DNA from: Macrostomum lignano
Taxonomy: Eukaryota
Assembly (NCBI GenBank): GCA_002269645.1
Contig: NIVC01001167.1
Span: 248,001 to 312,000, forward strand
DNA length: 64,000 nucleotides
Direction: 5' to 3'
The notes under the pieces are model-generated. The model had not been told where the DNA came from. It saw only the letters and a list, made by a program, of their open reading frames with translations, and made no database searches. Made by a program: the position numbers and the translations under genes. Shown here piece after piece: positions 24,132-61,127 of this stretch. Numbering within the stretch: position 1 is the stretch's first letter; each line of letters starts with the position of its first letter.

Positions 24132-24149
24132 ATATGAATATGTGCTAGC

Positions 24150-38242: not shown

Positions 38243-39705
38243 ATGAGCAAGCAGGTACCACCCTCAAAGATTGCAAAACCATCTGGCCTACCTGCGGCTA
38301 AGCGAGCCGATAATAGATCCTCCGTAGACAAAATGGAGGCGTTCGGCCGTAGCCTGCTTGGTCTAGGCAGAAAATCCGAACGGCCACTTGCCGGTCCTCC
38401 TAGCGCAGCTACGACCTCAGGCGCAGCTGGTGCAGCTATCAAGGAGCCCAATAGTAATAGGGCCTCCAAGACGAGCGCTGATAGCATCCCGCCGGATGCC
38501 CCTTATAGCCTCGCAACCCTTGGCTGCCCAGCTGAAATAGACTGCACCATCGCTCCGCCATCTGATACGCCACCGACGCCCAGAGAACAGGCAAATAAGG
38601 CAACGCCTGAAACCTTGCCGAACAATGCCGAAAAACCTGAGGCGAAACCAAATTATACTGGTGACAATGTGTCTACCATTCCGAAGTCGCCAGTACTTGC
38701 TATCACGGCAAAACAGCAGCACAAGTCACCGGGCAGTGTTGTTTCGATTTCGTCGGACAGCGGCTCCGCGACTGTATTGGAAGGAGCTGGCCAAGCCGGC
38801 TCCGAAGACCCCAATGCAGCCGCATTTGCCCCTGCTTCTGAAGCCTCCGGCGAGGACGATTCGACACGTGCTGCAAACGTCGACCTCGATGCTGAAGATA
38901 ACGACGGGCCCTATGTTGATCCGAATAGCTCGAACAGTCGCGACGCTGTGGAAAATGAAGTCGATGAGGACAACGCCAAGTATCTCCGCAATTCCATCGG
39001 CTTCCCTATTCACCCGGACCGCACCGGTGAAAATATCCAGCGCTACGGCGATGCTGTGCTAGAATACTATCCTAAGCTTATTGAGTCAGTCTCCAAGCAG
39101 CTTTACGACTGCCTCATTGCCGATCTCTTGCCAAAGGCGATCAGGCACCGGCCTCATGAGCAGCGTAAAGTTGTGTGGTTCGGCCCAGGATATTCGTACT
39201 CGGGCGTACCTCTAGAACCAAATGACAAATGGCATCCGGCTGTCGAGGATCTGAGGGATTTCTTAGAATTCAATACAGATCTCGGCATGCCCAAATTTAA
39301 TTCATGCCTAATCAATTTTTACGAGAGCGCCGACGACCAGATACCGTAAGGCGAAATAATGACCAAAGAATAATCGGGCGCTTTCTTACCGAGCCAGGCT
39401 CTGTCATAGTCATGGCAGGCGGATGCCAGCGCCGATGCCAGCACAGCGTCCCGGCTGTGGGCATGCAGGAGGGAGTCCGCATATCGCTCACTTTTCGAGT
39501 GACTGAACCTCCTCGCACAGCCGCACTGGGGCGCGGAGGCCCAACAAGAGCAGCAGCTGCACTCGTCGGAGATGGGCCTGGCAGTGGCCGGGCGGGCACC
39601 AGCCTGGCCGCGCCGGGCTCCCGGACAGCAGCGAATGGGCAGCCAGGAGATCGCGGAGCGGCCGGCGCGTCCGGCTCTGCGGTCCCAGGTGGCCCTCGAG
39701 CCTAG
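38243..39705 (+). pseudogene. ORF1 N-terminal part of copy A with an AlkB domain lacking the HxD segment
   Basis: RKVVWFGPGYSYSG...FNSCLINFY..IP, then a frameshifting deletion, then GSVIVMAGGCQRRCQHSV...RISLTFR. Confidence 0.85.
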
Positions 39706-39768
39706 GGCAACGGCGGCGGCATCGTCGGCGGTGCGGGGCGGGGCGGAAATCGCCAGTCCTATGCTGCA

Positions 39769-41177
39769 ATGGCGGCAACCAACCAGGATGTATCACGGCC
39801 TCCTAATAGGGGAAATAGCAACGTAGTACCCGTGGTGTTTAATACTGCGGCGGAAACTAGCCAAATAGAATTTCTAAAGTGGCTCGCGGCCAACTTTCAA
39901 GGTTCGGCCCGGGCCACACTTACCAAGAAATTGACCCACGAAGTCGGCTTTCTAGTCTTCCCGGCCACTCCACGAGACCACCAACTGTTTCTGCGTGGGC
40001 CTCTGCGTGAGCCCCAGTTCGCTGGGGGGCCGGTGACGAGGCGTCTACCAAAGGCTCGACCGGACCCAAGAGCTAGGCCTGCTGCGCCACGGCGACCAAT
40101 GACCCGAGCGGTCCACTCGTTCGTGGTGCGCGGCGTGCCTCCGGAGGTCGAGGCCAGCGACTTCAAGCGGCATCTACAAGAGAGTGCAGGTCTAAATATA
40201 ATTTCAGCTAGCCGAATAACTGCTAAGCGAGACAATAAGCCTACGTACTTGGTCCGCGTGTTTGTCCGCAACAAGCAGACTGTTGACGCCTGCCTAGCAA
40301 CAGGAATTGTTACGGACTTCATGACCTACCAGTGCGAACCAAACAAGACCGCAGCTCCGGCACGAGCACCGCAGTGTCAAAACTGCCAGCGTTTCGGCCA
40401 TCACGCCCAGCGGTGCAAAGCGGCCAAGCGTTGCAGGATCTGCGCGGCCGAGCACCACTGGCGTGACTGCGACAACCAGGACGCGGTAAAATGTGCCAAT
40501 TGCAATGAGCCGCACAGAGCGAACTACCGCAACTGCCAGGTGGCGATCGACTGCCACAGCGCGGCCCAAAGGCGTGCGGCTGCCTACGCAGCGGGCGCCC
40601 AAGAAGCCGCGGCAGCACAGACAGGTCGACCGCTCCACCACCTATTGCGGCAGCAGCGGCAGAAGCAGCATCAGCATCAGCAGCGGCAGCGGCAGCAGCG
40701 GCGCTACCCGCCCCCGCCCCCGCACCGGCACCAGAACCGGCAGCAGCACCGAGATGGGTCGACGCTGCAGCACGGGCGACAACGGCGACAGGGGGCAACG
40801 ATTCGTTTTGGCTTACCGGCCCTGGCCTCCCTAGCCGGAAGCGCCCTGTGCGCGAATCGACCGACTCGGAGACGCAGACAACTGCGCCGGATGTAACGTC
40901 TAACAATGACACGCCGCCAAGTGCCAGAGAAGTCTCCCAGCTTCAGGGACTGGTGAGTGGGTTCCTTCCCCTCCTGGTCCAAGCACTTGTTGAGGTGCTG
41001 TCGACTCTCTGGCAGAGCCCGGCTAAACGGCCGCCTACTACCGAAAGCTCCCGTCAAACGGTGCAAGACGTAGTAGGTAGGGTTCTGGCCCGGGTCCTCG
41101 AAGGCGAATCGAACAGTCACCAAGGCCTTGGTCAGCTGCTTGGAGCCTCCTGGCGACAGGCGGGTGGCCAGACCTAG
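39769..41177 (+). CDS. Gag-like ORF1 part of copy A (RRM-like region + three Cys/His knuckles)
   Basis: SFVVRGVP, PTYLVRVF, QCQNCQRFGHHAQRC, CRICAAEHHWRDC, CANCNEPHRANYRNC; frameshifted tail. Same frame as 39304-39705, separated by one TAG. Confidence 0.88.
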
Positions 41178-41194
41178 AATAATATAGGATAAAT

Positions 41195-43564
41195 ATGTTC
41201 GGTAATAACGGGCACGATAGCTCGAACCCCACTGCCTCAGGGCTCAAGATCGGTCACCTAAACTGCAGGGGGGTAATACCGAAACTAAAAGAACTCAGGC
41301 TCTGCGTCTCAGACCAGAAATTGGATATTGCGCTGTTTTCTGAGACCATCCTGAAAAATTCCAAGTATGCACTTTCCCGGGCTATGCTGCAGTGCGGTTT
41401 GACCTTCCGATTACGAAGCGCGGACTCCTCCTTGTTCACACCCCACGGGTTAAGGTAGCAGACGTCCAGCTCTCGTACGACAACGTCAACCATGAGGTCC
41501 TTACTTGCACAGTCACTCCTGTTGACGGCGCATGTCCACCTTTCCAACTATCCCTGGTCTATCGGTCCTCGTAGCCGGACAACCTCGACACCGGACTTTT
41601 GACGAGGCTGTCCTCGGCAAAATACTCGCTCATCATGGGAGACCTCAATGCTAGGCACAGCTTCTTGGGGGGTGAAAGTCGCAACAACAGAGCAGGACAG
41701 CAGCTCCATGATTGGCTCTGCGTCGATCCATCCCACCGCCCCACCGTTCTCAACCAACCAGGCCAGTTCACTGGAATAGCCCACCGGCAAGGCGTTGTGT
41801 CCCGGAATGTGCTCGACCTTGGGTTAGCCTCCGGCGACCTCGTCTCACTTGTTCAAGACTTTAAAGTGGGCTCTGACGTGGACAGTGATCACCTCCCAAT
41901 AATACTCACCCTGGCGAGTAACTCCCCAGACTGGCAAGGGCCAGAGAAGGCTCAAAACTTTGCCAAAGCTAACTGGGAAGAGTTCCAAAATTCCTTGATG
42001 GAAAAACTGGTACAAGCGTGGCCTCCAGACCTTAGTACTAGGCAGCAAATTGATGCGGAGGTCGACCTCATCACGAACGCGATCCAGAAAACCATCGAGG
42101 ATAATGTCCCGGTCAGAAACGGCCGTAGAGCCCTCCCCCAGAGGATCATTGCCATGATCAAGGAGAGGAGGAAGCTCCGGCGTCTGTACCACAGTACCAG
42201 GGATGACAATTTTAGGCTGCTCGCGAATAGAAAGGCGAAGGAAATAAAAAGCGCTATTTATTCGTTTGAGCAGGGCCAGTTTACCCAGATGTGCGAGAAA
42301 ATAGTTGAAAAAAGTCAATGCCGGAATGTCAAGGACTTCTGGCAGGACACAAAAAAATTGATGGGGCGCAAAAAGGGCACCACTATTCCGTCCTTGAATG
42401 ATGGCGCCACCCTCGCACATACTGACTCAGACAAAGCTGATATGCTAGCGAGAGCACTAGATGTCAAAATGCGCCCGATTCCATCGACCGATGAGGAGCT
42501 GAAGAAGAGGGTTGAGCAGGCTATGAAGCTCCCCATCTTTAGACCGATTCCCTCGGGCGTAGATCCATCCATGGGCCACCCCCTGGAGGCTCCGTTCTCT
42601 GTTACAGACACCCTCTGGGAGCTGGACCACCTAAAAGTTGACAGTGCTCCGGGCCTAGACAAAGTTCCTAACTGCGTCCTTAAACATGGCCTGGAGCCCA
42701 TTGCGGTTACCCGAATCACTAAACTCTTCAATGATTGCTATCGTACGGGCATCTTCCCATCGCAGTGGAAAAAAAGCGGTGGTGACGATGATTCCTAAAC
42801 CTGACAAACCTCCTGAATCCCCGGGATCCTATCGGCCCATCAGCCTGACCTCCTGCCTCGGCAAGGTGTTCGAGAAGTTATTGGTGAGGAGGCTGATGAA
42901 GCATCTTGAGGGCCAGGGTATCCTCGGCGCGGATCAATGTGCGTACCGGAAGGTCCACTCAACTTATGACAATCTTGTCCGCCTCGTCCAGGACGTCCAG
43001 GTGGGCAAAGCTAAACTAAAAAGGATTCTGGCCATCCTCCTTGACGTACAAGCGGCGTTCGATTCGGTGTGGTATGACTACCTGAGGTTCAGGATGTATG
43101 AAGTCAACACGCCAGACGAAGTCCGGTTCCTTGGCATGAACCTGGACTACCGGCTGACCCTTAACTCGCATGTTGAAAGAGTAGTCAGCCACGGCCGGGC
43201 GCTTGCCCTGTCCATTAACCGCATTGCTAAGCTGACCCGGCTAAGCAGCAATACCCTTAAAATGCTATACAGGGCTTACGTTGAGAGTGCGCTGACTTAC
43301 GGTGCCCCGGTGCTGAACATCATAGCACCCAGTAATCTCAATAAGCTCCAGAAAATCCAAAACTTAGCTCTTAGGATCTGCTATGGCGCCCCTAGTTACA
43401 CCCAGGTAGCCTACCTGCATGAGCTGGCAGCCATGCCTATGATGGCAGACAGGATTCGTTCCCTGGGTGTAGGCTGGCTCTCCAAGGTGAAGGCTGCTGG
43501 GCACCACGATTTCCACATTGAGCCGGAACTCCCTAGAGCTGCCCGCAACCGCCCCCAGTGCTGA
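41195..43564 (+). pseudogene. ORF2 of copy A: AP endonuclease + reverse transcriptase, frameshifted with an internal RT deletion
   Basis: GHLNCRG, FSET, MGDLNARH, VLDLGL, SDHLPII; SYRPISLTSCLGKVFEK, LLDVQAAFDSVW. The sequence jumps from FRMYEVN to EVRFLGMNLD, so the QG and ADD motifs are missing. Confidence 0.9.
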
Positions 43565-44047
43565 ACCTGCTATGGGACAGCCTGAAGAGGAGGCAAGCTA
43601 ATAGACAAGCAGCTGCAAATGCGGCGGCCCGTGCGGCCCAAAACCCGCCCTAGATTTACTAGGTTAGCTGCCCCAAAAGAAAACTTAAAGTGCCCCCAAG
43701 ACAGTGGCTTCCCCTCTCTATTACTCTGGACCTAGCCGTCTGTCAGTGCACAAATAAAAGGTCTAATACAAAAAATAGGCGTGAATAGTAGCGGCAAGTG
43801 CTGGACCAGGCGGGTGGGCCTACGACCCAGTAACAATACAGTAAAAATAGCTGGGCTTACCTGTTGGTACTGCAGGTGATACTGTAATCCGCTGTAGAAC
43901 TCTTCCTGATTCCGCCTCTCTTTACCTTTTTACAATCCAATTATTTTAGACTGCAAATGCTCCTTTCACATCTGGCTTTTGCCTTGTTTATATTTTACTC
44001 TTATTTTTATCCTAACCCAAATATAGTAGTAGTAGTAATAAGTAATT

Positions 44048-44874: not shown

Positions 44875-44927
44875 AAACCATCCTAACACAAATATAAACT
44901 AAACTACTAAACTAAATAAGTGCTTCC

Positions 44928-45751: not shown

Positions 45752-46681
45752 CATAAAATTTTAGTCCTATGTGCCAACCAGGCCAAACCAATATACTTTG
45801 CGTAGGGGCTGCTACTAGTAGTAGTTCCTGCCGCCTAGCTACTATTTTATACTCAAACCAAATGTAAATATTTAAAATACTGACTTTAAAAACCTTCGCG
45901 CTGATCCCCTTTTCGGTCCAAAATATCTTTGTGAGGACCCGTCCCATTTACCGTAGAGCTCCCCCCTTTATCAGTTGCGAACACTTCTTCACTTTTATAT
46001 TCCTAAATGTACATAATCAATTTAAATCGAAATTTTTAACCTTCGTATAACTAATAATTAGCATAATTTTTAAATTTAAATATATCGGCAGAGCCCTACC
46101 CGGGCTGACCCGAGGTGCCTTCAGCACCAATCGTTTAACAACAGAGCAGTCCTTGGTCCGTAGTTGCCTTGGTAACTTAAAATCAATTAAGTAGTGAGCT
46201 ACTACAGGTATCCACAGTGTGGGCCTCGGGTAGCTCTTGCTTAATTGTGCTTAAGCATCTGGGGTGACTGTTAAAGTTGTTATAAGTAATCTTTTATCTT
46301 AAAATAGTCAACTTTATATTTATAGTAAGTGAATCCAAGTTTTCCTTCTAGAATTTTCTATAACAGACTTCTTAATTATATCTATGGTTTTCGACTCCCT
46401 TACATGTACCACTAAGTTTTGTTTGAGCTACGCCAGTGCTCAATTCCATGTTAACCCTTTCTTTTGCTATCTTTCTCAAAACTCAATAAACGCCGATTCA
46501 TTATAATTTAATAAGGCTTTCTTAATAGGTTATGGGCCCTGCGCCCCTCCACTGTGATCTACTGCAGTGTGAACAATAAAGCTGCTTCAGTGGCAGTGCG
46601 TCAGTCGGCGTGATTTTCAGGCTCTACCGTCTCTTAGAAAGTTCAAGCTCAGCAGTCCAGTTGTGCTGGTGGATCGACACG

Positions 46682-48885
46682 ATGTCTTTCGATGCCAAAC
46701 TACTGGTTGAGAAGTTGGATAGTTCCAACTACACTGTCTGGAAGTTCAAGATGAAGAACGTCCTGATGGAGCGAGAACTTTGGGAAGTTGTTGATGGTAC
46801 AGAGACACTTGCTGAGGACGCGACCAACGAGGTCAAAGTTCAGTTCAAGCGGCGTGCGAACAAAGCCCTAGCGACTATCGTATTGGCTGTTGCGGATAGT
46901 CAAATTCATCTAATTGAGGATGCAGTAACTCCAAAGGAAGCGTGGGATAAGCTTCAAGCATATTTCGAGCGGAGTTCGCTGGCAAATAAATTGTTTCTTA
47001 ATCGGAAACTACAAGCGCTCAAGATGGTGGAAGGTGCATCCATGCAGGAGCATGTTAATCAGTTCAAGGATATGGTCAAACGACTGTCGGCTATCGGAGC
47101 AGGTGTTCCCGAGGACTATCAAGTCACGATTTTGTTAAACAGTTTGCCGAAGTCATATGACGGGTTGATTACTGCCCTGGAATCGCGAGCGGACGACTTG
47201 ACGATGAATTTCGTACTCGAGCGGCTTTTGCACGAGGAGTCAAAACGACTTGAACAGGAAAGCTGTGAACCTAGCAGCAATTCAAAGGCTCTGGTTGGAT
47301 TCAACAAGCAACAGCACCAGAGTGTCAGACCAAAAGTATGTTTTTCTGCAATAAGCCTGGTCACCTAAAGAAGCACTGTTACAAATTCAAGAATAGCCTC
47401 TCTGTGACAGGTGGATCGAGCACAAATTCAAGACCACGTGCACAGGATTTGAAGAAATCCAACAGAAGGCATCAGGCGAGGATTGCAGACGCCCCAGCAA
47501 AAGACTTAAAGGACTTTTCAGCTTCAGATGAGGAAGATTCTGCATTTCCGGCGTTGTCTATGGGCACATCATCGACAGCTAACGAGTCTAGTACATGGAT
47601 TGTAGACTCAGGCGCAACGAATCATATGAATAATGATCGGACAAGTTTTGAGAAATTTGAAGATTTTTCGGTACTGGAGAACATTTCGCTAGCAGATGGA
47701 CATAAGCTCGAAGCCACTGGAAAGGGAACCGTTCGGTTGTATATCAATACTGGTTCTGGTAAGAAATTGTGCGAGCTGAGCGACGTTCTATATGTACCAC
47801 TTATGGAACAGAATTTGTTCTCAGTATCAGCAGTTACAAGAAAAGGCTTCCGTGTACAATTCAGCGACGACAAGTGTCAGATTTTGAGCGCAACTGGTAA
47901 GATTGTTGGAGAAGCTTTGAAAGTTGGCAGACTGTACAAATTGAAAGGCTTTAACCTAACTAACGAGACTGCATCTGTCGCGAGAAACAACAGCATCGAC
48001 CTATGGCATCAGCGCTATGGACACCTAGGTGAGCAAGACCTGAAATCTCTAATTAATGGAAAGCAAGTGGACGGAATTGAGCTTAGCAAGGATGACGTAA
48101 AAACTGAAGGCATCAGTTTCTGCACAGCATGTGTGGAAGGAAAGCAACATCGAACGCCATTTGCAAAGGGTGAAACGTCAATGTCAACTGAACTATTGGG
48201 TCTAATTCACAGTGACGTGTGCGGTCCCATGAAAACTACGTCAATTGGAGGATCAAAGTATTTTGTCACATTTATTGACGACTATTCGCGCTATTGCTCA
48301 GTTTACTTCATTAAAAGCAAGTCAGAAGTCTTAGAAAAATTCAAGATCTTTCAGGCTCTCGTCACGAATCAAACAGACAAGTCTATCAAGATTCTTCGGA
48401 CTGACAATGGTGGAGAGTATACATCAGGAGAATTTGAGGCATTCTGTGCCCGAAACGGAATCATTCACCAGACTACTGTCCCACACTCTCCTGAACAGAA
48501 CGGAGTAGCCGAGAGAATGAACCGAACCTTGGTGGAGGCAGCACGAACAATGATTGCACATGCTCATATTGGCAAGGAATTCTGGGCAAAAACAATCTCT
48601 ACGGCAGCATATCAGCGTAATCGATCAATAACCAGCGCAGTCAACAAAGCGACACCATATCAAATTTTGACCGGCAGCAAGCCGAGTGTTCAGCATTTGC
48701 GAGTATTTGGATGCGTTGCCTACGCGCATGTCCCAGCTGAGAAACGTCACAAGTTTGACTCAAAAGCTCGGGAAGTCAGATTTATTGGATACTTGGAAAC
48801 CTCAAAAGGATATCGTTGTTTTGATTTCCAAACACGATCAGTTTTCGTCAGTCGCGATGTAACGTTCCAATTACAATCCGATTAA
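46682..48885 (+). pseudogene. Copia gag-protease-integrase (one frameshift; RT/RNase H missing)
   Basis: NYTVWKFKMKNVL, CFFCNKPGHLKKHC, WIVDSGATNHM, LWHQRYGHL, IHSDVCGP, FIDDYSR, LRTDNGGEY, QNGVAERMNRTL, VSRDVTF. Confidence 0.95.
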
Positions 48886-51045
48886 AGAATGTTCTGACCA
48901 CATATATTCATGAAACACAGACGGAATGGGCAAGATACGTGCCAACGGCGACTTTAGCCCTGAACATAAGCTATAATAAAAATCTTCGAACTTCCCCATA
49001 TGAGCTAATTTTTGGCCATGCATACAAGACCCCCACCGAAAGAGTTCTAAAGGAACAAGTGTCTGTTTATGACGAAGCCCCAAGTTATGTAAAGAAGCTA
49101 GCTAGTTCTTTGAAATTGAGTTGGGATGTTGCAGGCCATTTTCTACTTCAAGAGCGTCTCAAACAAAGTGAGCAAGCGAACAAAGGAAGAAAATATCATA
49201 AATTATCTGAAGGAGACATCGTATATTTGGAAAAACCTGTGAAGGACGGAAAATTCGACACAAATTATGAAGGCCCCTTTACCGTCAGGAAAGTGATAGG
49301 CGATTCCACAGTTGCAATTCAAAGACCGGAAAATGAACAGAACGAGGAAGCTAGAACAGTAAACGCCAATAGGTTGAAGAGACTATTGTCAGGCCCACCA
49401 ATAGCAGTTCCACCATTCTCTGAAGAAACCAATGGCAACACAACACATGATGCGCATAAAATCAGATTGCACAAATCCAACGCCACGCAGACAGAAGTAA
49501 CAGAGGAATCAGCTTGTAAGAGATTCACTTTGCGTCCACGCAAGAACTAGAACCATGAATATCCTGAACGACTTTGAGCGCCGAGCATGGATCTACCATA
49601 GGATCCACTTCTTTCAATGGTTCTCCCCCCTACTGCCGGGTTATAAGGAAAGAGTAATACCCATCTTGGAAGATATCCGAACGGAAGCACGTAGACTATA
49701 CGAACCGGGAGTTTCTGAAGTAGAATTCAGAGAGCCGCCACCGACACGGCTGATTGATGTATACAAGACGGAGCTCCGCAATCTCGCTGACGATATGTAC
49801 GATGACGAATATCGCGAGGGACGCATTATTTGGGAGCTGATAGTTATCTGCTGCACCAAACTGCTTTCTCTCCTAAGAAACGAGGGTAATGCGAATACTA
49901 CTGAAGAGGACAGCTCAGAGGACAACTGAAGCTCAAGTTGAGTCGGACAACATAAATCGAAGATCGCAGATGGTTTTGAGGCGAGATTGAACGAGCTACA
50001 TCGCTATATCCAGAATGATAAAAGCTTTACGAGATTAAAATCATTCGCTCATACTTACAGCTATTTGCTTTCATACTAGTCTCAATGATTTCTTCATTTC
50101 CATATTTTACTAAATGCAAATGTGGGGACCACATTTTGAAAAAGGGGGAGTAATATAAGGATTCAATTTCATATGCATGTAGGCCTTAGGGACTATTTAG
50201 GGACTATTTTAGGAAGTAGTATTAGGGACTAAATTAGGCAATAATTAGGGAATTGCATTGTTATCAGAGCGTGGTGAAGTGTAGCAGTTGTGGACAGCTG
50301 CACTCTTACAAAAAGCCACAAGTGCTTGATGACGGCATTGCAAAGGGCGAGTGCAGGCCGCCCTAAAAGTCTGCTTCCACTTTAGAGGGGTTGTATGCTT
50401 TATGTGGGGCGAGGTTCAATTACATTTTTAACAGAGACATTTCAGAAATCGCACGAGAAAGGGGAACCGTGAGAATCGGCCGGAATTGCGCGGTGGCTGG
50501 AAGACGTGGGAAATGATAACGCAGACAGTTTCACAGGGACTTCATCGGGGAAATTTACTATAAATAAGCGAGGGGTTACGAGCGTAAATGCTAAAAACTT
50601 TACCTTTTTTCACTCTCTTTTCACTCTCTTTTACACGCCTTGTATTAACTTTTGGATTGCTTAATAGTTTGCAAATCACGACGACCGCTTCTGCAGACAC
50701 CTGTGACCTGAGGGTAAGACTGAGCACTGCCATGACTATAGATTTATGAATAGTAGCGTATCGGTCTCAGACTAGGTAGATAGGCGTAATTTATATATAT
50801 ATATATATATATAATAGATTAATAGGAGTATTTGAGTAGCTTAGTTATACCGTAGTGTCTCAGACTTATTCTCCCTGCTTGTAGCTCGCTTATTTGCTTA
50901 TTTACTTATTAATACAAACGTTGAAAATGCAGTAGTAAATATAATTATATGGTTGATCGGTAAACAACATCCAAACATATTCTACCTCGTTTGAGTTACT
51001 ATTAATCATATGTAAGGTTCTTAGTTTGCGGCCAACTAGAAAACT
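48880..51045 (+). mobile_element. Gypsy 3' remnant: integrase C-terminus, an extra 124-aa ORF, PPT and probable 3' LTR
   Basis: TEWARYVPTATLALN..SPYELIFG, GDIVYL, YEGPFTV, VNANRLK (48939-49550); ORF 49555-49929; PPT AAAAAGGGGGAG at ~50138-50149. The LTR end is uncertain. Confidence 0.75.
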
Positions 51046-51616
51046 TATACTATGGTTTTCAACTCCCTTACCTGTACCACTGAGTTTTGTTTGAGCTACG
51101 CCAGTGCTCAATTCCATGTTAACCCTTTCTTTTGCTATCTTTCTCAAAACTCAATAAACGCCGATTCATTATAATTTAATAAGGCTTTCTTAATAGTGAC
51201 TACTCTCCTGGCGTCGGCATCGACCTCGGCAGTGACTTTCGGCGACTTTGGCTTCCGCGGCGACTTCAGCGACTCCGGCCTCGTCAGCGGCTTCTCGGCG
51301 CCTGCAGCCTCGGCGACTTCGACGGCCCGGTGTCTCGGCGGCTCGGCTGGTCGGCAGCTCGGTGACTCGTCAGCGCGGCGCCAGGTGCCTGCAACTGTTC
51401 GGCCAGCCTCGCGCGACGTCTGCAACACGGCGCCAGGTCTACCGGCCTAGTAGATACCAGAGCATAGCATCGTTTTAAAGACTTTTCTTGCACTCTCTAG
51501 AATTGGCTCTACTTTAAGTAGTATCATTTGATTTTTAAAGTTTTACTAGTTTTAGTTTTAAATAGTTTTATTAGGCCTACCGCTTTTCTTGAATTTAGTA
51601 CTGTCAGTAGTAATCC

Positions 51617-52867
51617 ATGGAAGTAGAGACCCAGAACAAACGCTCATCTCGCGACACCGACTCGCCACCGGTTGTCACGGCGACGAAAAAGGCAAACAAT
51701 CGCTCGTCCTCTGGTCCTGGACGAGCGTCCAACTCTGCTCCGACGGCAAGCAGCGTGCCAGCATGCGCCAAGCTAGAAGAAGAACCTCCAGCAGTCAGCA
51801 GTCGGGATGTTCAAGCCCCAGCACCCTCGTCTGAGGCCAGATCCAGGCTGTCCATCGCGGCGAGTCATCCTCTGCCTCCTGACGAAAATGACGCGCCTTC
51901 AGGTGAGACCTCCCCGGGGTCGGGCTCTGGCACTGGTTCTAAAACGGTTCAAATAAATAAGACTGGTGAACAAATTCTAAATCTAGGACACAATCATGGC
52001 CAGCTTAGGTACCTACCTCAGGCCTTAGCTAAAATTGAGAACGATCTCACTAACATTATTATGAAAGAAATTCATCCTGCCGCGTTTCACCACCAAACAA
52101 ACGGGCGACCTGAAATGAGAAAAGTAGTTTGGTTTGGGCCACCGTACTCTTACAGAAATGGCCAGCTTGACAGAAATGATCAATGGCACCCAGAGTTTAT
52201 CAAACTAGTCACCTGGCTCCACGTTGAACTGGGATTACCACTCTTCAACTCCTGTCTTATCAACTTCTATGAAGATGGTAACACGACTATTCCATGGCAC
52301 GCCGACAACGAACCTGAGCTTGGAGTCAACCCTACTATAGCCTCTATCTCGTTAGGTGCTCCAAGAGAGTTTGTAGTCAGGGCCAACACCTCAAAGAATA
52401 TTGTGTTCAAACAACACCTGGCCAGCGGCAGCGTTCTCATTATGAGTGGCTCAACCCAGCAGCACTTCCAACATTGCATCACGAAGGACCCAAAGGTAAA
52501 AAATATGAGAATCGACTTAACTTTCCGAACAACTCAAGACCCGGCACCGATAACGCCGCACTTCAATCCTTGCGTGCGTCCAGCAGATGATGCCATTGAA
52601 CAGCAGCCAATCACCTGTGACCTAGACAATGAAGAGTCAATTCACCTAAAAGCTCAAGAAGAAAAAGCCAACTTTGAACGCATTAGACAATTAAGCCAAT
52701 CCAGCACTAGTTCTTATCGCCAGCACAATCAATCTAACAACCAAACTAAAGCTAAGGGGTCTGCACCGGTACTTTTCGAAGTCGCCCTAGAAGGGAAGGA
52801 CCCCATCCAATTCGAACGGTTGCTCAAGACCAATTTTCCTAACATCAGGGTCAAATCTGTCAAATAA
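51617..52867 (+). CDS. alkB: ORF1 N-terminus of copy B with an intact AlkB-family 2OG-Fe(II) dioxygenase domain (~52106-52528)
   Basis: RKVVWFGPPYSY, FNSCLINFYEDG, WHADNE (HxD), IASISLGAPREF, LASGSVLIMSG..QHC (His), RIDLTFR (Rx5R). Symbol is family-level only. Confidence 0.93.
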   Translation: MEVETQNKRSSRDTDSPPVVTATKKANNRSSSGPGRASNSAPTASSVPACAKLEEEPPAVSSRDVQAPAPSSEARSRLSIAASHPLPPDENDAPSGETSPGSGSGTGSKTVQINKTGEQILNLGHNHGQLRYLPQALAKIENDLTNIIMKEIHPAAFHHQTNGRPEMRKVVWFGPPYSYRNGQLDRNDQWHPEFIKLVTWLHVELGLPLFNSCLINFYEDGNTTIPWHADNEPELGVNPTIASISLGAPREFVVRANTSKNIVFKQHLASGSVLIMSGSTQQHFQHCITKDPKVKNMRIDLTFRTTQDPAPITPHFNPCVRPADDAIEQQPITCDLDNEESIHLKAQEEKANFERIRQLSQSSTSSYRQHNQSNNQTKAKGSAPVLFEVALEGKDPIQFERLLKTNFPNIRVKSVK

Positions 52868-54115
52868 TTGTGCCATTCATCTGGTTACATAAAAATTCCT
52901 GAACATCCTAAAGACTTCAATGTACTCCTAAATGGGCCGCTTAAAGTAGACTCCATCAATGGGCATGAAGTTACTCGCAGACTTGCCTCCAAACGACCAA
53001 CCCGTCAAGGCGATGATCGATCACAAATTCGAGGACCTCTCAAGGCACCAAATTTACACTCATTCATAGTAAAAATGTAAAAAAAATGCGGTTGATGTCA
53101 GCGGCCTAGCGAAACACCTCTCGGAGGGTGACCAGCAGCTTCCAATTGATGGGGCTGTCCGCATCTACTCGAAGGCTACTGGTCAAGCTACCCCCTTTGT
53201 CCGCCTCTTCACTAAATGCCGTGGCGCCATGGACCACTGCATTGAACATGGCATCTACCTTGGACTGTTCCGGTACCGCTGTGAAGCCTCAACCAGCCTC
53301 CCACCAGTCAAAGCGATTCAATGCAAACGTTGCCAAGGCTTTGTTCACCTCGAGACTCGATGCACATCTGGTTTCAAGTGCAACAAATGTGCTCAAGACC
53401 ACTACTCTGGCGATTGTCCAAAGGAGCACAAGTTCAAGTGCGCAAATTGCGAAGGAGAGCACCCGGCTTATTCCTACAAATGCCCAATGGTCAAGAAGGC
53501 CAACGAAGCTGCTACAAGTAAAGAACACGAGCGCATTAACAACTTAAAACTAAAACAAAAACGAAAAAAAAATTTCCGGAATAACCAGTTGCCATTTGGG
53601 AGCCAGACCCTTGGGGAGGTTTTCGGCGTTCCAGGTCCGCAGTCCTATGCCGAGATGTTGCGTCCCAACCCAAACCAGCTCTGCCATCCATGGGTCCAAT
53701 TGCCTACTCCAACCGAGCTGCTCAGGCTTTCATCTCGGCCTCGGCTCAGCCTGCTGACTCTCTCGCTGCCGCCGCTGCCAACCATCAAGCGCTGCTAGGT
53801 GCAACCAATCCATCTGAGTTCACAACAGCTGCTCCAGCCAATCCGGTCTCGACGCAATCTGGAGTTGATTCTACTAATCAATCAGGACCATGTGAGAGGG
53901 GCCTTTTCTCTCGGGAAGACGTGCTCGAGGTTGCGTTGCTGGCGCTTGACCGACTCATGAGCATAGAACCAGGACGGATGTTCACCCCCTGGGAGGCGGG
54001 GCAACTTGTCTTCCGGGTGGTGTCTAAAGTCGTAAGGGTGTTCAGGAATCAGAGAGTGCCTGTTGCAGAGTCAGGGGACACCAAAGTCGCGCAAGCGAAC
54101 GGAGGTGGAACCTGA
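52868..54115 (+). pseudogene. Gag-like remainder of ORF1 of copy B
   Basis: In frame with the AlkB ORF across one TAA. HEVTRRL and HSFIVK align with copy A; knuckles CKRCQGFVHLETRC, CNKCAQDHYSGDC, CANCEGEHPAYSYKC; frameshifts present. Confidence 0.85.
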
Positions 54116-54204
54116 ACTCTCTGATTATAAGTTGCTTAGCTTAGTTCAATATATTCAATTCTACTCGTAAAACTCCTACGACAAATACCAAAAGTCACTC
54201 CGTT

Positions 54205-56980
54205 GTGCGGGACTTCCTCAACATTGGGCATCTGAACTGTAACTGGCTCAGCAACAAAATCTATGAAATAATTTCATGGCTAAATAATGAGGACTTAGAT
54301 ATAGGACTATTCTCCGAAACTGGCTTAGTTGATACAAACCCTTTCTTTGTTCAAGACTACGCTATCCTTAGGTTTGACAAACCTCACTGTAGAAGAGGAC
54401 TTGCCGTAGCTTATAAAAATAATCCTAACATTATGAATATTAAAAAGTTTTATGACAACAGTCACCATGAATACATTAGTTTTGAGGTTTTCTTAAAGCA
54501 TAACAGGTTGAACAAGCTTAATATAGTCCTCTTCTACAGGGCTCCCAACCCCACCAGGCTAAACTGTGACATTTTAAACAAACTTTTCTCTAATCCCTCC
54601 ACCCTGGTCATTGGGGACTTTAATTGTAACCATCTTGCCCTTAGTGGAGATTCCAATTATAATTACCCTGGCAGACAGCTCTTTGACTGGCTAGAAGAGC
54701 ACCCCAACCCCCCATCTTACTAAACAACTATGGTGAGTTCACCAGAGTGTGCAATCGTGGCGGCTCCCACACTGCGAACGTGCTGGACTTGGGGCTTTGC
54801 TCTCCCAACCTTGGCGCCCACACCAGAGAGGTCCTTATAGGGGACGACTTGGACAGTGACCACTTCCCCATCATTATTAAAGTCTACCTTGACCCAAACA
54901 GTAAAATATCGAAAAAAACCCAAAAGTTTTTGGAGCACTGACTGGGAGACCTTCAGGGTGGTTCTTCAAGACAAGCTCAGTGACAATCAAATCAGCAATC
55001 TTAGGTTAGCTACTCCAGGTGAATTAGATCGAGCTGAAGATCTGTTAACTCAGAGTCTGAATGACACGATTGAGGAGGTGGTCCCAAACAGGGACCCCCG
55101 CGAGCAGCTCCCTCCCGACATAATAGCCAAGATTAAGTACAGGAGAAAACTTGGGAAGCTTTTTAGGAATACCCGAATAGATAATTTTAGGATTCAGACG
55201 AATCAAGCTGCCAAGGAGATCAGGCTAGCCATTCGTGTGCACAGGTCAAGAAAGTTTGAAAACTTATGTGAAAAAATTTCCAAGACCAGTTACCGTAAAG
55301 AACCAAGAAAATTCTGGGTTGACATAAAAAAAATGATAAGTGAGGGTCCCAAACCCATCACCTACCCCCCGATTGTTCTCAAAGACTGTCGCTGATACTG
55401 AAGCTGAGAAAGCTCAGGCCTTCAAAGAATTCCTCGAGGCTCAGATGCGTCCCTGCCCAGATAGATCCACCCAGCTGTACAAAAAGATTGAGGCCCAAAA
55501 AGATCTTGAGATCTACAAACCTCATAACAACATCTTAGCTGCGTTAGCCTATCATAAAGACCATGCTGATCCCGATAATCCGGACAAAGAAGACGTAGAA
55601 GCTGATATCCTTAATATCATAGATCAGGATGTTCTATGGGAAAGCAGGAAGCTCAGGGCAGGGGGGGGGCTCCTGGGCCTGACAAGATACCGAATGTTGT
55701 CCTCAAATTTAGCCTGAGTCCAGACTCCATCAGGGTGCTTGCGAAAATCTTTAATGCTAGTTTCCTCCTTGGATACTTCCCCAAGCGATGGAAAATGGCC
55801 ACTGTCAAAATGATATCCAAACCTAATAAGCCAAAAAATCTCAATGCTTATTATTAGCCTTACCTCTTGTTTAGGTAAACTTTATGAGAAAATCTTAGCA
55901 AGGAACCTTCGGGTTATCTTAGAAAATCTAGGGATCATTAATGACGAGCAATGTGCCTATATGTATGATCATAGTACCTACGATAATATTGTTCGACTTA
56001 CTGACGATGTGCTAAAAATGCTCCAGCTGAAACAGTACACGTTGGGGGTCTTTTTTGACGTAAAGGGAGCCTTTGATGGGGTCTGGCACAACTACCTTAA
56101 ATTCAAAACTCGAAAGTGTGGAGTCCCGCACAACATGACCAGAATCTTAGCAAATTATCTTGACGATAGAACTGTCGAGATTGTAGTAGCTGGAGCTCAA
56201 AGTGCAGGGTTCCAGCCAAAAGCAGGTGTCCCCCAGGGGGGTGTCCTTTCGCCCCTACTATTTATTATTTATGTCAGCTCTATACCAAAACCGACAGATA
56301 ATAAAGTTAAAATTAGTCAGTTCGCTGATGACTTGGCGGTCTGGGCATGTGCAAGAAAATCTACCATGTCTGCTAAAAGACTCAACGACTACTTCATCCG
56401 TCTCAAAAGGTGGCTTGATGCTGTTGGTATCACTATTAATGCCTCAAAAAGTAAAGCAATCTCCTTCTTCAAGGCGAACGGCAACAAAACAGGCCCTGGT
56501 GAACCCCTAATCAAACTTGGGAACAACAGAATTAGTTATTATGACACTGTCACCTTTCTTAGCATGGTCCTAGACAAACAACTTAACTACAAACCTCACG
56601 TCGACAAGGTCGTAGGTACTACCACAAAAAAGATTGCTGCGCTAGACAGAATGGTTAAAAATTCCAGAATTTCCCAACTCGGACTACGACTGATCTATGG
56701 GTCTTACATTGAAAGTACCATCGCTTACGGTGCTCCAATTCTTCTTAATCTTTCCGACTTCCAGGTCAATAGAAATCAGGTGCTCCAAAACAAGGCTCTG
56801 CGTATCATCCTTGACGCTCCACCCTACATCAAAATTTCCTACATTCACTTGGTCACTAACATGCCCATGATCAAAGATCGCCTGCTCAGCCTGGGGAAAA
56901 AATGGTTCAAAAAAGCGTTAGAAAGCGGTATACATAATTTTAAAGAAGACACTAAAGAATGGTCGAGACCCGGCTTTTGA
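54205..56980 (+). pseudogene. ORF2 of copy B: AP endonuclease + reverse transcriptase, no RNase H; frameshifted
   Basis: GHLNCN, FSETG, IGDFNCNH, VLDLGL, SDHFPII; ISLTSCLGKLYEK, FDVKGAFDGVWH, GVPQGGVLSPLLF, QFADDLAVW, FLSMVLD. Confidence 0.92.
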
Positions 56981-58569
56981 GTCCCGGTCACAACCGTTCT
57001 CAGGAAAAAACTTAATGCCTAAATTATAGCCAGATTCTTGGCTATAAGACTAATATTGTGCCCTTTTTGTTGGGGATTGATCTGTCGACCCTCTTCTATT
57101 TGTTAATTTTTGAAATTATAAAACAAAAAATTTTGCCGTACAACGGGACGGCTCCTGAGGTTATAACCTGCCTTCCTAGGGGTACTAGCATGGGATATGC
57201 ATGCTATGCTGCATAGCCCTCTCTATCCACAGCTCCCTCAGGACGGGAGACGTTTTAAACCTGGAACCCCAAACCAGGTGGACCAATAGGCCCTTAACTC
57301 TGACTGAGTGAGCCGCTTTGGATTGGATTTGGGGTTTGGATTGCTATTTATAGCTTCAAAAAATTTGACATGACAGCTATGGAAACTTCGTTTTCGTAGC
57401 AGTAGTATGATTTGAATTTGACCATTAATATTGATTATTCTTAGGAATGATCGATTAAATTTTGACTCGAGCACCTCTCTCCGGGAGAGAGTCCAAACTT
57501 TACTGCTGGCTTTGATTCCAATCAGTTGACCAAATCTTAATGCGACTATCTTCCACTTAAAGTATTAGTCATCAAATCAAATATTTTTCAAATATTGCTA
57601 AACGTTTCACTTTTATTCTTTCCAAATTGCTAAAATTCTTTTATTCTGTTTATATTTAGCTCAAATATTTTCTTTGTGATTTCTTTACTTTGTTTTTACT
57701 CCTAATCTTGAAATTTTCATTTCAGTTTTAGTTTTATCTCACTTTCTTTATCTCTTGTTTTACTCTTGCTCTTATCTTTTCTATCTTTTATACTCGTATT
57801 ATTTGTTATATAGCTACCCCCAAATATTTGTTTTATGTAAATATTTCCTCGTTTTTTACTTTTCCTAAATTGGACGTTCATAATCTAATAATTTGGAACA
57901 CAAAAATACATAGTCGCGCAAGAGCCCTTCAAAGGGCTGAGGCGCAGGGCAATTCTATTTTATATTAGCCCCTACCTATCAAGTAAGTAAGTAAGTCCTT
58001 AGAGCAGTCCTTGGCTTTTTTGGAAAGTTAAGAAATTGCTGTGCTTTAGACACCACAGGTATCTACAGTGTAGGCCTACAGGTGTTTACTGTGCAGTATA
58101 TTGACAAGCTTTCTGGGAAACCCACGTTACCTGGCGTCTTCGGCTTCTGCGGCGATCAACGGGTTCTGCAGCTTCTCCGGCCTCGGCGACTGCTCTTCAG
58201 CGACTTCGGCATCGTCGGCGGCGTCTGCGGCGGCCAGCTTCGACGGCAGCATCGGCGCCTGCGGCTTCGGCGGTTCGACGGCTGGGCCGGGCTCAGCGGC
58301 GGCGGGTGCGCGGCTCTTCAGCGGCGACGGCACGGCACCAGGCACCTTGCGCGGCATCAACACGGCGCCAGACCCGCTCGTCTTATAGAAACTAGGACCT
58401 ATTATCAGTTGTAGACTTTATCTTGCATTTAGTTGACTATAGACTACTGACAGTAGGTCAATTAGCATTTTCTTATAGTTTATTAATTAAGTTTTAAGTT
58501 TTAAGTTTTAATTAGCCTACCGTTTTAAGGCTTTATCTTGTATATTAATCTTATTAACAATTTATTTAA

Positions 58570-59752
58570 ATGGAAATTGAGACTAATAGTAAGAGGGCAC
58601 GTGAAACCGACTCGCCACCGGTCACTAAAAAAGCCAACAACCGTACTTCAACTGGCACCGACCGGTCTGTTGCTGCGTCGTCCATTCAAGCGTCGTCTCG
58701 TATGCAGCATCAGCACACTCTTGACGAAGAACCTTCGGTCGGCGTCCAGGATGGTGAGCCCAGGCCTGTTCTGAAAGAGTCACATTTCTCAATCTCAAAG
58801 CCAGACTTATCAGATGACAAAACTTACAAACCAGTTCCAAACTGCAAGATCAGATATATCCCTAATGAAGGCTAATGAGGCTAAACTCACCAAAATCCTC
58901 ATGGAGGAGGTATACCCGCTGTCCTTCCACCATCAAACTGGGGGTAGACCGGAAGCTAGGAGGGTGGTCTGGTATGGGCCAGAATACACCTACGGTGGTA
59001 GCAAGCTTGAAAGTAACGACGACTGGAACCCGGTTGTCACGCACCTTGCCACATGGTTGTGTATCGAGCTCAATCCGCCATTAGCAAATTCCTGTCTCAT
59101 TAATTTCTACAAAGACGGGTCAGTAGCCATCCCATGGCACTCAGACAACGAGCCGGAGCTAGGAGATGACCCGACAATAGTGTCAGTGTCATTAGGTGCC
59201 CAGAGAGATTTTCAGCTCAGGACAAAGGGCATGAGTCAGAACGTTGTCTTTTCGCAGAAGCTGGCTAGCGGCAGTGTAACAGTAATGAGTGGGGCCACGC
59301 AACGGTACCTTCAGCACTCTATCGCCAAAGACCTGAAAGTCAAAGATTTTAGAGTTAATCTTGCATTCAGAATCACTAAGGATCCCAGAATTGAGAACTC
59401 ACCAGCTCATACACCTGCATCAGCCAATCCTTGCGTCCGTCCGACTGACGACTCCATCACCTGCCACCTTGACGATGAAGAGTCGGTACGGCGCAGGGGT
59501 AGGCAGGACGCAGAAAACATGCAAAAGATTAGTTCACGCTCCAGCAGCAGCTGTAGGCTTAACTCTAAAACTAATCGAACCAATCAGGACACTCAAGCAC
59601 AAACAGCCAATCAGCGATCACAGCAGACTACTCAGCAATCCACTAAGCAATCTAAACCTAGCACTCAGCAGCCTCACTCAGCCAATCAGCACTCAGGCAC
59701 TCAGCAGCCAGCCACTCAGCCTAACACTAAGCAGTCAAACGCAGCCAATTAG
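58570..59752 (+). CDS. alkB: ORF1 N-terminus of copy C with an intact AlkB domain (~58945-59370); one upstream frameshift
   Basis: RRVVWYGPEYTY, NSCLINFYKDG, WHSDNE, IVSVSLGAQRDF, LASGSVTVMSG..LQHSI, RVNLAFR. Symbol is family-level only. Confidence 0.92.
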
Positions 59753-61110: not shown

Positions 61111-61127
61111 CAGGTGCGCAGCACCCC

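What the first reader, a model, noticed from the sequence alone, without database searches (positions are those of the whole stretch)
38243..59752. A LINE family whose ORF1 carries an N-terminal AlkB demethylase domain (three diverged copies)
Seen: three distinct non-LTR elements each have an AlkB-family 2OG-Fe(II) domain at the front of ORF1. In A and B it is in frame with the gag-like RRM/3xCCHC region, separated only by single point stops. B and C keep HxD, the distal His and Rx5R. Conserved motif columns across diverged copies point to selection rather than a one-off capture. Established: AlkB/ALKBH2/3 enzymes remove m1A/m3C from DNA and RNA; several plant RNA viruses (Flexiviridae, Closteroviridae) carry AlkB in their replicase; m1A impedes reverse transcriptases. 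Inference: fusion to the ORF1 RNA chaperone would place a demethylase on the element's own RNP. It could repair or erase RNA methylation before target-primed reverse transcription, or counter a host methylation defence. I do not know of AlkB as a standard ORF1 domain, but could not check the literature.
Basis: partly seen in the sequence, partly recalled or inferred. Interest (0 to 1): 0.92.

Follow-up and report, generated by a model that had tools for sequence, protein, structure and literature searches.

The report
LINE ORF1 proteins carrying AlkB demethylase
Three decayed jumping genes (LINE retrotransposons) in this flatworm-like sequence each have an ALKBH3-like nucleic-acid demethylase fused to the front of their RNA-binding protein. 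Intact relatives elsewhere keep the same fusion, so it is a conserved and apparently undescribed design that probably cleans methyl lesions off the element's own template.

Summary
Pfam 2OG-FeII_Oxy_2 (AlkB) matches element B (E 5e-30) and element C (E 2.8e-26), and matches element A as two sub-threshold halves. In each element the domain sits at the front of a LINE ORF1, ahead of two RRMs and three CCHC knuckles, then an endonuclease and a reverse transcriptase.

All three window copies are dead. A lost its HxD motif through a deletion of about 28 codons. B has stops and frameshifts. C is cut off after the linker.

Intact relatives exist. A 9-kb Logan contig carries one uninterrupted 843-aa AlkB-RRM-CCHC ORF1 followed by a 948-aa endonuclease-RT ORF2. 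Macrostomum lignano holds copies that are 99% identical to each other, in the same gene order.

HxD, the distal His and Rx5R are conserved. Synonymous sites are saturated, but pN is only 0.26, so the domain is as constrained as the RT. Sequence and a predicted structure (pLDDT 91) both match human ALKBH3 best, not ALKBH5.

AlkB also appears in the ORF1 of two other LINE types and in a probable Penelope-like element.

Ten full-text searches found no description of this in LINEs. Known precedents are plant RNA viruses and an orchid Gypsy element. Repbase and Dfam could not be checked.

Demethylation of m1A/m3C on the element's own RNP is inferred, not shown.

The parts
38243..39349 (+). Element A: ORF1 N-terminal region plus the N-terminal half of AlkB (frame 2). 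It ends just before the HxD position.
   Evidence: Pfam PF13532 E 0.0039, profile positions 46-107. tblastn to B, C and M. lignano AlkB. The N-terminus resembles M. lignano P0091.
39346..39516 (+). Element A: C-terminal half of AlkB (frame 1), with the distal His and Rx5R. About 28 codons, including HxD, are deleted between the two halves.
   Evidence: Pfam E 0.0017, profile positions 137-194. Three-frame translation. Comparison with the intact A-like P0091.
39769..40896 (+). Element A: gag-like part of ORF1, with two tandem RRMs and three CCHC knuckles. It is in frame with the AlkB C-half across one stop at 39703-39705.
   Evidence: The AF2 model shows two beta-alpha-beta-beta-alpha-beta domains with pLDDT 83-91. 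Top Foldseek hits are all tandem-RRM proteins, E about 1e-7. CCHC motifs are read directly.
41243..42798 (+). Element A: ORF2 endonuclease (EEP/APE) and linker.
   Evidence: Pfam Exo_endo_phos_2 E 2.6e-8. tblastn.
42686..43564 (+). Element A: reverse transcriptase, with an internal deletion of about 125 aa.
   Evidence: Pfam RVT_1 E 6e-15, covering only the first half of the profile. tblastn against B's RT leaves a gap between B residues 109 and 234.
51221..51616 (+). Element B: 5' UTR, including a GC-rich block shared with C.
   Evidence: blastn 51221-51360 against 58178-58316, 71% identity.
51617..52867 (+). Element B: one uninterrupted 416-aa ORF. It holds the conserved N-terminus, an intact AlkB domain (nt 52109-52528), a linker and the start of RRM1.
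   Evidence: Pfam E 5e-30. Best PDB sequence match is ALKBH3, E 1.4e-21. AF2 pLDDT 91.2, Foldseek TM 0.82-0.85 to ALKBH3. Translation.
52868..53690 (+). Element B: the rest of RRM1 (frame 2, stop at 53078-53080), then RRM2 and three CCHC knuckles after a frameshift (from about 53082).
   Evidence: Three-frame translation. tblastn with P0001 and with A's gag.
53690..54115 (+). Element B: ORF1 C-terminal domain, back in frame 2.
   Evidence: tblastn P0001 residues 545-696, 42% identity.
54205..56980 (+). Element B: ORF2 with EEP endonuclease, linker and RT (FADD motif). It is broken by at least four frameshifts.
   Evidence: Pfam Exo_endo_phos_2 and RVT_1, E 1.1e-31. Three-frame translation.
58133..58569 (+). 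Element C: 5' UTR with the GC-rich block shared with B.
   Evidence: blastn. Sequence.
58570..58860 (+). Element C: ORF1 N-terminus (MEIETNSKRARETDSPP...). It lies in a different frame from AlkB, so a frameshift separates them.
   Evidence: tblastn B residues 1-64, 45% identity. Translation.
58814..59752 (+). Element C: ORF with an intact AlkB domain (nt 58940-59371) and the start of a Q-rich linker.
   Evidence: Pfam E 2.8e-26. 61% identity to M. lignano P0001. Motifs.
59753..60080 (+). Element C: remains of the Q-rich linker, with stops and a 63-bp tandem repeat. The element ends here, with no gag or ORF2 downstream.
   Evidence: Translation. TRF. No tblastn hits downstream.

Best explanation
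These are three old, inactivated copies from three diverged families of one lineage of endonuclease-type (APE) LINE retrotransposons. Their closest relatives are in the flatworm Macrostomum lignano.

In this lineage ORF1p is a Type I RNA chaperone (two RRMs plus three CCHC knuckles). It has gained an N-terminal ALKBH3-like Fe(II)/2-oxoglutarate dioxygenase, joined by a low-complexity linker.

Shown:
- the domain and its complete fold;
- its catalytic motifs;
- its fusion into one ORF in intact elements;
- its retention under constraint across families that are only 35-60% identical.

Inferred: the enzyme is active. Because ORF1p coats the RNA that encoded it, it would work in cis on the element's RNP. 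There it would oxidatively remove N1-methyladenine and N3-methylcytosine from the single-stranded template RNA, and perhaps from the nascent cDNA. These lesions block the Watson-Crick face and stall reverse transcriptases, so removing them would let target-primed reverse transcription make full-length copies.
For: - Domain and motifs.
- Fold: AF2 pLDDT 91.2, pTM 0.88. Foldseek ranks human ALKBH3-ssDNA complexes first (TM 0.82-0.85), then ALKBH2, E. coli AlkB (0.61-0.69) and ALKBH5 (about 0.62). Sequence E-values are 1.4e-21 for ALKBH3, 2e-12 for ALKBH2 and 3e-3 for ALKBH5.
- Fusion: B's 416-aa ORF spans AlkB and the start of RRM1. L004 has one 843-aa ORF1 (AlkB-RRM-RRM-3xCCHC-Cterm) followed by an intact 948-aa EEP+RT ORF2. 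P0086, P0087 and P0088 are likewise single ORFs of 757-962 aa.
- Same gene order in M. lignano at two loci, with copies 99.2-99.7% identical.
- Constraint: pS is saturated (0.75 or more) while pN for AlkB is 0.26 for B-C. The pN/pS ratio is 0.29 (0.23-0.37), at least as low as for the RT.
- RRMs confirmed by model.
- Recurrence of AlkB in other retroelement ORF1s.
- Precedents: plant-virus AlkB domains demethylate RNA in vitro and were proposed to maintain genome integrity, as cited in PMC9289625. tRNA base modifications interfere with cDNA synthesis by RTs, and PMC12140624, which benchmarks tRNA sequencing by the OTTR protocol, mentions AlkB 27 times. The use of AlkB treatment in tRNA sequencing to get RT read-through is from my own knowledge; I did not read it in the paper.
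Against: - No enzymatic, expression or RNA-modification data exist.
- All three window copies are dead, and A has lost HxD.
- Substrate choice is inferred only from similarity to ALKBH3 (27-29% identity in the structural alignment). AlkB-family substrate ranges shift easily.
- The AlkB tree places the LINE domains near ALKBH3 only with weak support (bootstrap 0.2-0.37).
- It is unknown whether LINE RNAs in these animals carry m1A/m3C at levels that matter.
Confidence: 0.55

Rival explanations
1. The domain is an m6A eraser. It would strip N6-methyladenosine from the LINE transcript, or from host mRNAs, to escape m6A-reader-mediated decay or silencing, as proposed for the orchid Gypsy AlkB.
For: A retrotransposon-encoded AlkB with m6A demethylase activity in vitro is published (PMC9289625). 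m6A affects L1 and ERV RNA fate in mammals (PMC7873242).
Against: The domain is far closer to ALKBH3 and ALKBH2 than to ALKBH5. Sequence E-values are 1e-21 and 2e-12 against 3e-3. TM-scores are 0.82-0.85 against about 0.62. According to that paper, the orchid domain resembles AlkB m6A RNA demethylases, which is a different subfamily.
Confidence: 0.18
2. The domain works on DNA. It would repair 3mC/1mA in the nascent single-stranded cDNA or at the nicked target. This may be linked to off-target 3mC made by DNMTs in a host that keeps DNMT1/3.
For: The top structural matches are ALKBH3-ssDNA complexes. DNMTs introduce 3mC and co-evolve with ALKB2, and M. lignano is reported to keep DNMT1, DNMT3 and ALKB2 (PMC9246332).
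Against: ORF1p is an RNA-binding chaperone. The cDNA exists only briefly. Nothing here distinguishes RNA from ssDNA substrates. It is not known whether the hosts of the other AlkB-bearing retroelements (L007, L008, L009) methylate DNA.
Confidence: 0.15
3. The domain is catalytically irrelevant. It could be a passenger exon or merely an extra nucleic-acid-binding module. Alternatively, the juxtaposition is a chance insertion next to a host AlkB gene.
For: All window copies are degraded. Copy A lacks HxD.
Against: - The same order, AlkB-gag-EEP-RT, recurs in three diverged window copies, three M. lignano copies and an intact Logan element.
- Catalytic residues are invariant in every copy except the deleted one.
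- pN is well below saturated pS.
- The fusion lies within a single ORF.
Confidence: 0.05

Closest known systems
AlkB domains in plant RNA virus replicases (Alphaflexiviridae, Betaflexiviridae, Closteroviridae)
   Same: An AlkB dioxygenase of the repair type is built into a protein of a selfish replicator that copies an RNA template. These viral domains demethylate RNA in vitro and were proposed to maintain genome integrity (as cited in PMC9289625).
   Different: Those are RNA viruses of plants, and the domain sits inside the replicase polyprotein. Here it sits on the RNA-chaperone ORF1p of an animal non-LTR retrotransposon that copies RNA into DNA.
Orchid (Phalaenopsis) Ty3/Gypsy Ogre/Tat elements with an AlkB ORF (PMC9289625)
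   Same: A retrotransposon lineage acquired an AlkB domain and kept it.
   Different: That is an LTR element in a plant. The domain is in an additional ORF, resembles AlkB m6A RNA demethylases, and has m6A demethylase activity in vitro. Here the element is a LINE, the domain is fused to ORF1p, and it is ALKBH3-like.
Type I (IB) LINE ORF1p: two RRMs plus three CCHC knuckles (Khazina and Weichenrieder classes, as summarised in PMC4120745)
   Same: The C-terminal two-thirds of the protein has this architecture.
   Different: None of the five described ORF1 types contains AlkB. The four ORF1 and LINE survey papers listed have zero occurrences of the word.
Human ALKBH3
   Same: It is the best match in both sequence and structure. 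HxD...H and Rx5R are conserved, and ALKBH3 acts on single-stranded substrates.
   Different: ALKBH3 is a stand-alone host protein with about 28% identity. Here the partner that supplies single-stranded substrate would be the fused RRM/CCHC chaperone.
Type IV ORF1p with an esterase domain (CR1/L2; PMC3905857)
   Same: It is a precedent for an enzyme-like domain inside a LINE ORF1p.
   Different: It has a different fold and a different proposed role (lipid or membrane interaction).

Membership tests
AlkB family (Pfam PF13532, 2OG-FeII_Oxy_2) | Profile match above the curated gathering score (31.2 bits) | tested here: met
   B scores 105.6 bits and C 93.4 bits. A's two halves score 17.9 and 19.1 bits, below the threshold because the domain is split and partly deleted.
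AlkB family (Pfam PF13532, 2OG-FeII_Oxy_2) | Fe(II) ligands HxD...H and the 2-oxoglutarate-binding Rx5R | tested here: met
   These are invariant in B, C, the M. lignano proteins and P0015. HxD is missing only in A, through deletion.
AlkB family (Pfam PF13532, 2OG-FeII_Oxy_2) | Double-stranded beta-helix fold with the N-terminal nucleotide-recognition part | tested here: met
   AF2 pLDDT 91.2. About 200 columns align to ALKBH3, ALKBH2 and AlkB structures.
AlkB family (Pfam PF13532, 2OG-FeII_Oxy_2) | Oxidative demethylase activity | not testable with these tools
   This needs a biochemical assay.
ALKBH3 subfamily | Closest relative by sequence, by structure and by phylogeny | tested here: inconclusive
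   ALKBH3 is the best PDB match by sequence and by fold. In the NJ tree the LINE clade neighbours vertebrate ALKBH3, but bootstrap support is only 0.2-0.37. The nearest cellular hits also include algal and bacterial AlkB.
APE-type LINE (non-LTR retrotransposon) | ORF2 with an N-terminal EEP endonuclease followed by an RT, downstream of ORF1 on the same strand | tested here: met
   Shown for A and B, for the intact L004 and for L006 and L010. C holds only the 5' part.
APE-type LINE (non-LTR retrotransposon) | Multiple dispersed copies; defined 3' end; target-site duplications | tested here: inconclusive
   Multiple copies are seen in the window and in M. lignano. The M. lignano unit is 6,457 bp with no poly(A) at the junction. 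The ends and TSDs of A, B and C were not found.
Type I ORF1p | At least one RRM immediately upstream of CCHC knuckle(s) | tested here: met
   Two RRM folds. Three CX2CX3-4HX4-6C motifs directly follow. Pfam zf-CCHC hits P0088.
Jockey superfamily / a named RT clade | Placement in an RT phylogeny with reference elements (RTclass1) | not tested
   No reference RT set was available. Database hits are at most 38% identical, and the only clade-type label was 'transposon BS'.

The most novel reading that the evidence does not exclude
Capture of an AlkB demethylase is a recurrent, convergent adaptation of retroelements.

Besides the flatworm Type I LINE lineage, AlkB sits in:
- the ORF1 of a PHD/coiled-coil LINE (L009, L001);
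- the ORF1 of a coiled-coil/RRM-like LINE (L007);
- the upstream ORF of a probable Penelope-like element (L008).

This adds to the published cases in an orchid Gypsy element and in plant RNA viruses.

It would mean that base methylation of template RNA, whether chemical damage or a host-imposed mark, is a general and selectable barrier to reverse transcription. These elements would carry their own eraser on the RNP.
Probability: 0.4. Interest if true: 0.85.

Novelty: new variant of a known kind. Interest (0 to 1): 0.72.

Why it matters
LINE ORF1 proteins are treated as RNA chaperones, with a short list of accessory domains: coiled coil, RRM, CCHC, PHD and esterase. A conserved nucleic-acid repair or demethylation enzyme fused to ORF1p would add a new functional class. 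It would also point to template methylation (m1A/m3C) as a constraint on retrotransposition.

The question is directly testable. Intact copies exist, M. lignano is a transgenic model, and AlkB assays are routine.

There is also a practical warning for comparative genomics. TE-borne AlkB copies can inflate or confound presence/absence calls for ALKBH genes in invertebrate genomes.

Tried and rejected
- Source of the window. Exact look-ups of two window ORFs found nothing. The species is therefore unknown, and the closest proteins are from M. lignano.
- RT clade. Two homology searches gave only unnamed hits at 38% identity or less, plus one 'transposon BS' label. PDB gave only generic L1 and R2 matches. 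The clade is left open.
- Distant RT relatives L002 and L003 (about 33% identity) show no AlkB, gag or EEP upstream. They are too distant and degraded to count as the same family, so they are not used as evidence.
- Corrected dN/dS. Synonymous sites are saturated in every pair, so only pN against pS is reported. The M. lignano copies are 99.2-99.7% identical, too few differences to use. Their frameshifts may be long-read indel errors.
- C-terminal domains of P0015 (esterase-like GDS motif) and P0168 (L1-like RRM/CTD). Neither Pfam nor PDB sequence searches support them. These labels are by eye only.
- L008 as a Penelope-like element. The RT and GIY-YIG hits are below Pfam thresholds, so it is called 'probable'.
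- L005 is the same locus as L004 from another run (100% identity). It is not an independent insertion.
- Krill and tubeworm genome papers that mention AlkB concern host ALKBH2 only.

Full report
**1. What is in the window**

Pfam scanning of the long + strand ORFs gave 2OG-FeII_Oxy_2 (PF13532) hits:
- ORF 51617-52867 (element B): E 5e-30, 105.6 bits.
- ORF 58814-59752 (element C): E 2.8e-26.
- Two adjacent ORFs of element A, in different frames: 38243-39349 (E 0.004, profile 46-107) and 39304-39705 (E 0.0017, profile 137-194).

EEP endonuclease and RVT_1 hits lie downstream in A and B. tblastn with the nearest database proteins, and with the elements' own pieces, finds exactly three AlkB copies in the 64 kb. 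Each is at the 5' end of LINE-like coding sequence.

**2. Anatomy (three-frame translations)**

- Element B. ORF1 starts at 51617. One uninterrupted 416-aa ORF contains a conserved N-terminus, the AlkB domain (nt 52109-52528), a linker, and the first strand and helix of RRM1. A stop follows at 52865-52867, another at 53078-53080, then a frameshift into RRM2 and three CCHC knuckles (to 53690). A second frameshift leads into the ORF1 C-terminal domain (to 54115). ORF2 (54205-56980: EEP, linker, RT with FADD) has at least four frameshifts.
- Element A. ORF1 starts at 38243. AlkB is split. Compared with B and with the intact A-like M. lignano protein P0091, about 28 codons including HxD are missing and the frame shifts at 39346. 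The C-terminal half keeps the distal His and Rx5R. It is in frame with the gag-like ORF 39769-40896 across a single stop at 39703-39705. EEP (41243-42798) and an RT with an internal deletion of about 125 aa (42686-43564) follow.
- Element C. The ORF1 N-terminus (58570-58860) is in another frame than the intact AlkB ORF (58814-59752). The Q-rich linker decays into stops, and the element ends near 60080 with no gag or ORF2.
- B and C also share a GC-rich 5' UTR block.

All three are therefore dead copies. However, the key point, that AlkB and the gag-like region form one reading frame, is directly visible in B.

**3. The gag-like part**

An AlphaFold model of A's gag ORF, built from an 8-sequence alignment, shows two beta-alpha-beta-beta-alpha-beta domains with pLDDT 83-91. 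All top Foldseek matches are tandem-RRM proteins such as NONO, Pub1, HuR, U2AF65 and Sxl (E about 1e-7). Three CCHC knuckles follow directly. This is the Type I (IB) ORF1p architecture as defined in PMC4120745.

**4. The AlkB domain**

- The HxD, distal His and Rx5R columns are invariant in B, C, the flatworm proteins and more distant AlkBs.
- The best PDB sequence match is human ALKBH3 (E 1.4e-21). ALKBH2 scores 2e-12 and ALKBH5 3e-3.
- The AF2 model of B's domain has pLDDT 91.2 and pTM 0.88.
- Foldseek ranks ALKBH3-ssDNA complexes first (TM 0.82-0.85 over about 200 columns), then ALKBH2, E. coli AlkB (0.61-0.69) and ALKBH5 (about 0.62).

**5. Is it a family trait? Relatives elsewhere**

- The closest proteins are M. 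lignano 'Fe2OG dioxygenase domain-containing' entries, 54-61% identical. One of them (P0001, 696 aa) runs AlkB, Q-rich linker, RRM, CCHC and C-terminus.
- An exhaustive phmmer search with P0001 found full-length single-ORF proteins of 757-962 aa with the same architecture (P0086-P0089). It also found an intact A-like AlkB from M. lignano (P0091).
- The contig encoding P0089 (L004, 9,079 bp) carries an uninterrupted 843-aa ORF1. An intact 948-aa ORF2 with EEP and RT (YADD) follows. Intact elements therefore exist.
- M. lignano contig NIVC01002892.1 (L006) holds two head-to-tail A-like copies in the order AlkB-gag-EEP-RT. Contig NIVC01002030.1 (L010) holds another. The copies are 99.2-99.7% identical, with a 6,457-bp unit, different flanks and no poly(A) at the junction.
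- Window A is only about 70% identical in DNA to these copies. The window comes from a different family or species, and its source could not be identified.

**6. Constraint**

The three window copies are deeply diverged. AlkB identity is 58% for B-C and 39-47% for A-B. A-B identity is 39-48% for RT and 31-35% for gag.

Nei-Gojobori counts show synonymous sites saturated (pS 0.75 or more) in every comparison. AlkB pN is 0.26 for B-C, giving pN/pS of 0.29 (bootstrap 0.23-0.37). That is as low as or lower than the RT segments (0.36-0.57) and gag (0.52). A corrected dN/dS cannot be given. Even so, the domain clearly evolved under purifying selection comparable to the RT while the families diverged.

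**7. Origin**

An NJ tree of 145 AlkB domains gave these results:
- The Type I LINE AlkBs (window B and C, M. lignano, Logan) form one clade.
- The Penelope-like-element AlkB P0233 is attached to that clade.
- Vertebrate ALKBH3 lies in the neighbourhood.
- Bootstrap support for these groupings is weak (0.2-0.37).
- The nearest cellular hits also include algal and bacterial AlkBs.
- P0015 and P0168 fall elsewhere in the tree.

A single capture at the base of the flatworm lineage, and separate captures in other retroelements, is the simplest reading. It is not proven.

**8. AlkB in other retroelements (found in passing)**

- L009 and L001 (ENA; 12 near-identical 692-aa proteins). ORF1 has a PHD finger, a coiled coil, AlkB and a C-terminal part with a GDS motif. 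A 1,107-aa ORF2 with RT and a weak EEP hit follows.
- L007 (JGI metagenome). ORF1 has AlkB, a coiled coil and an RRM-like part, followed by an EEP+RT ORF2.
- L008 (Logan). A 1,012-aa ORF with AlkB lies upstream of an ORF with sub-threshold RT and GIY-YIG hits, so this is a probable Penelope-like element.

**9. Literature**

Ten full-text searches found no paper describing AlkB in a non-LTR ORF1. The four ORF1 and LINE survey papers listed contain no occurrence of 'AlkB'.

The known precedents are AlkB in plant RNA viruses and an AlkB ORF with m6A demethylase activity in orchid Ty3/Gypsy elements (PMC9289625). Repbase and Dfam could not be searched, so 'undescribed' holds only for the open literature that was searched.

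**10. Mechanism**

Shown: an intact-looking, ALKBH3-like catalytic domain, covalently linked to the element's RNA chaperone, kept under selection.

Inferred: it demethylates m1A/m3C on single-stranded nucleic acid of its own RNP, and so removes blocks to reverse transcription.

The inference rests on four points:
- ALKBH3-type specificity (established knowledge of the family).
- ORF1p cis-preference (established for L1).
- RNA demethylation by plant-virus AlkB domains (as cited).
- Base modifications interfering with cDNA synthesis by RTs (PMC12140624 abstract).

Rivals are an m6A-eraser role, repair of ssDNA lesions (possibly linked to DNMT-made 3mC, PMC9246332), and a non-catalytic passenger. 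The last is largely excluded by sections 5 and 6.

**11. Verdict**

I rate it a new variant of a known kind: retroelement or virus-borne AlkB was known, but a LINE ORF1p fusion of ALKBH3 type was not found in the literature. It is of high but not extreme interest. Recurrence across several retroelement lineages raises its value.

Noticed in passing
L009 1-7147; L001 343-2948: A second LINE lineage with AlkB in ORF1. The 692-aa ORF1 has a PHD finger, a coiled coil, AlkB and a C-terminal part with a GDS motif (esterase-like by eye only). An overlapping ORF2 of 1,107 aa has RT and a weak EEP hit. There are 12 near-identical proteins in ENA and Logan assemblies. The host is unknown.
   Followed up: partly
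L007 248-4609: A third LINE type, from a JGI metagenome contig. ORF1 has an N-terminal AlkB, a coiled coil and an RRM-like region (L1-like by eye). An EEP+RT ORF2 starts 55 nt downstream.
   Followed up: partly
L008 2120-7398: A 1,012-aa ORF with an AlkB domain lies directly upstream of an ORF with RT and GIY-YIG hits (both below Pfam thresholds). This is a probable Penelope-like element carrying AlkB.
   Followed up: partly
L006 9714-21146; L010 6128-13547: In M. lignano the A-like elements sit head-to-tail in tandem arrays. The period is 6,457 bp and copies are 99.2-99.7% identical at two loci with different flanks. There is no poly(A) at the junction. Their frameshifts may be long-read indel errors.
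   Followed up: partly
window 46376-51196: A Copia-like LTR retrotransposon lies between A and B. Its 153-bp terminal matches are 97% identical, and gag/integrase ORFs span 46610-48885. ORF 48939-49550 looks like the C-terminus of a different (Gypsy/BEL-type) integrase. It was deliberately not assembled or analysed further.
   Followed up: no
window 10768-25201: More retroelement debris: an RT ORF at 11579-13237, a DIRS/Crypton-like tyrosine recombinase at 16698-17609 (DUF3504 plus Phage_integrase), a distant LINE RT at 22248-22895, and RNase H ORFs at 23071-24042 and 24368-25201. No host gene was recognised among the ORFs scanned, so the window looks like a TE-rich region.
   Followed up: partly
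window 59657-59871 and 60854-62382: C's Q-rich linker contains a 63-bp tandem repeat. Downstream of C's break there are 20-bp and 14/42-bp tandem arrays, with an inverted copy at 62277-62382. What cut C off was not determined.
   Followed up: no
literature (PMC9246332) and M. lignano proteins P0001-P0003, P0091, P0234, P0246: A review states that M. lignano retains ALKB2 together with DNMT1/3. M. lignano proteomes contain several TE-borne AlkB proteins annotated only as 'Fe2OG dioxygenase', and these could confound such presence/absence calls. This was not checked.
   Followed up: no
P0011, P0105: Other AlkB fusions turned up among the hits: AlkB with THUMP and an RNA/DNA methyltransferase domain (a eukaryotic transcript), and PRP39-type HAT repeats with AlkB.
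   Followed up: no
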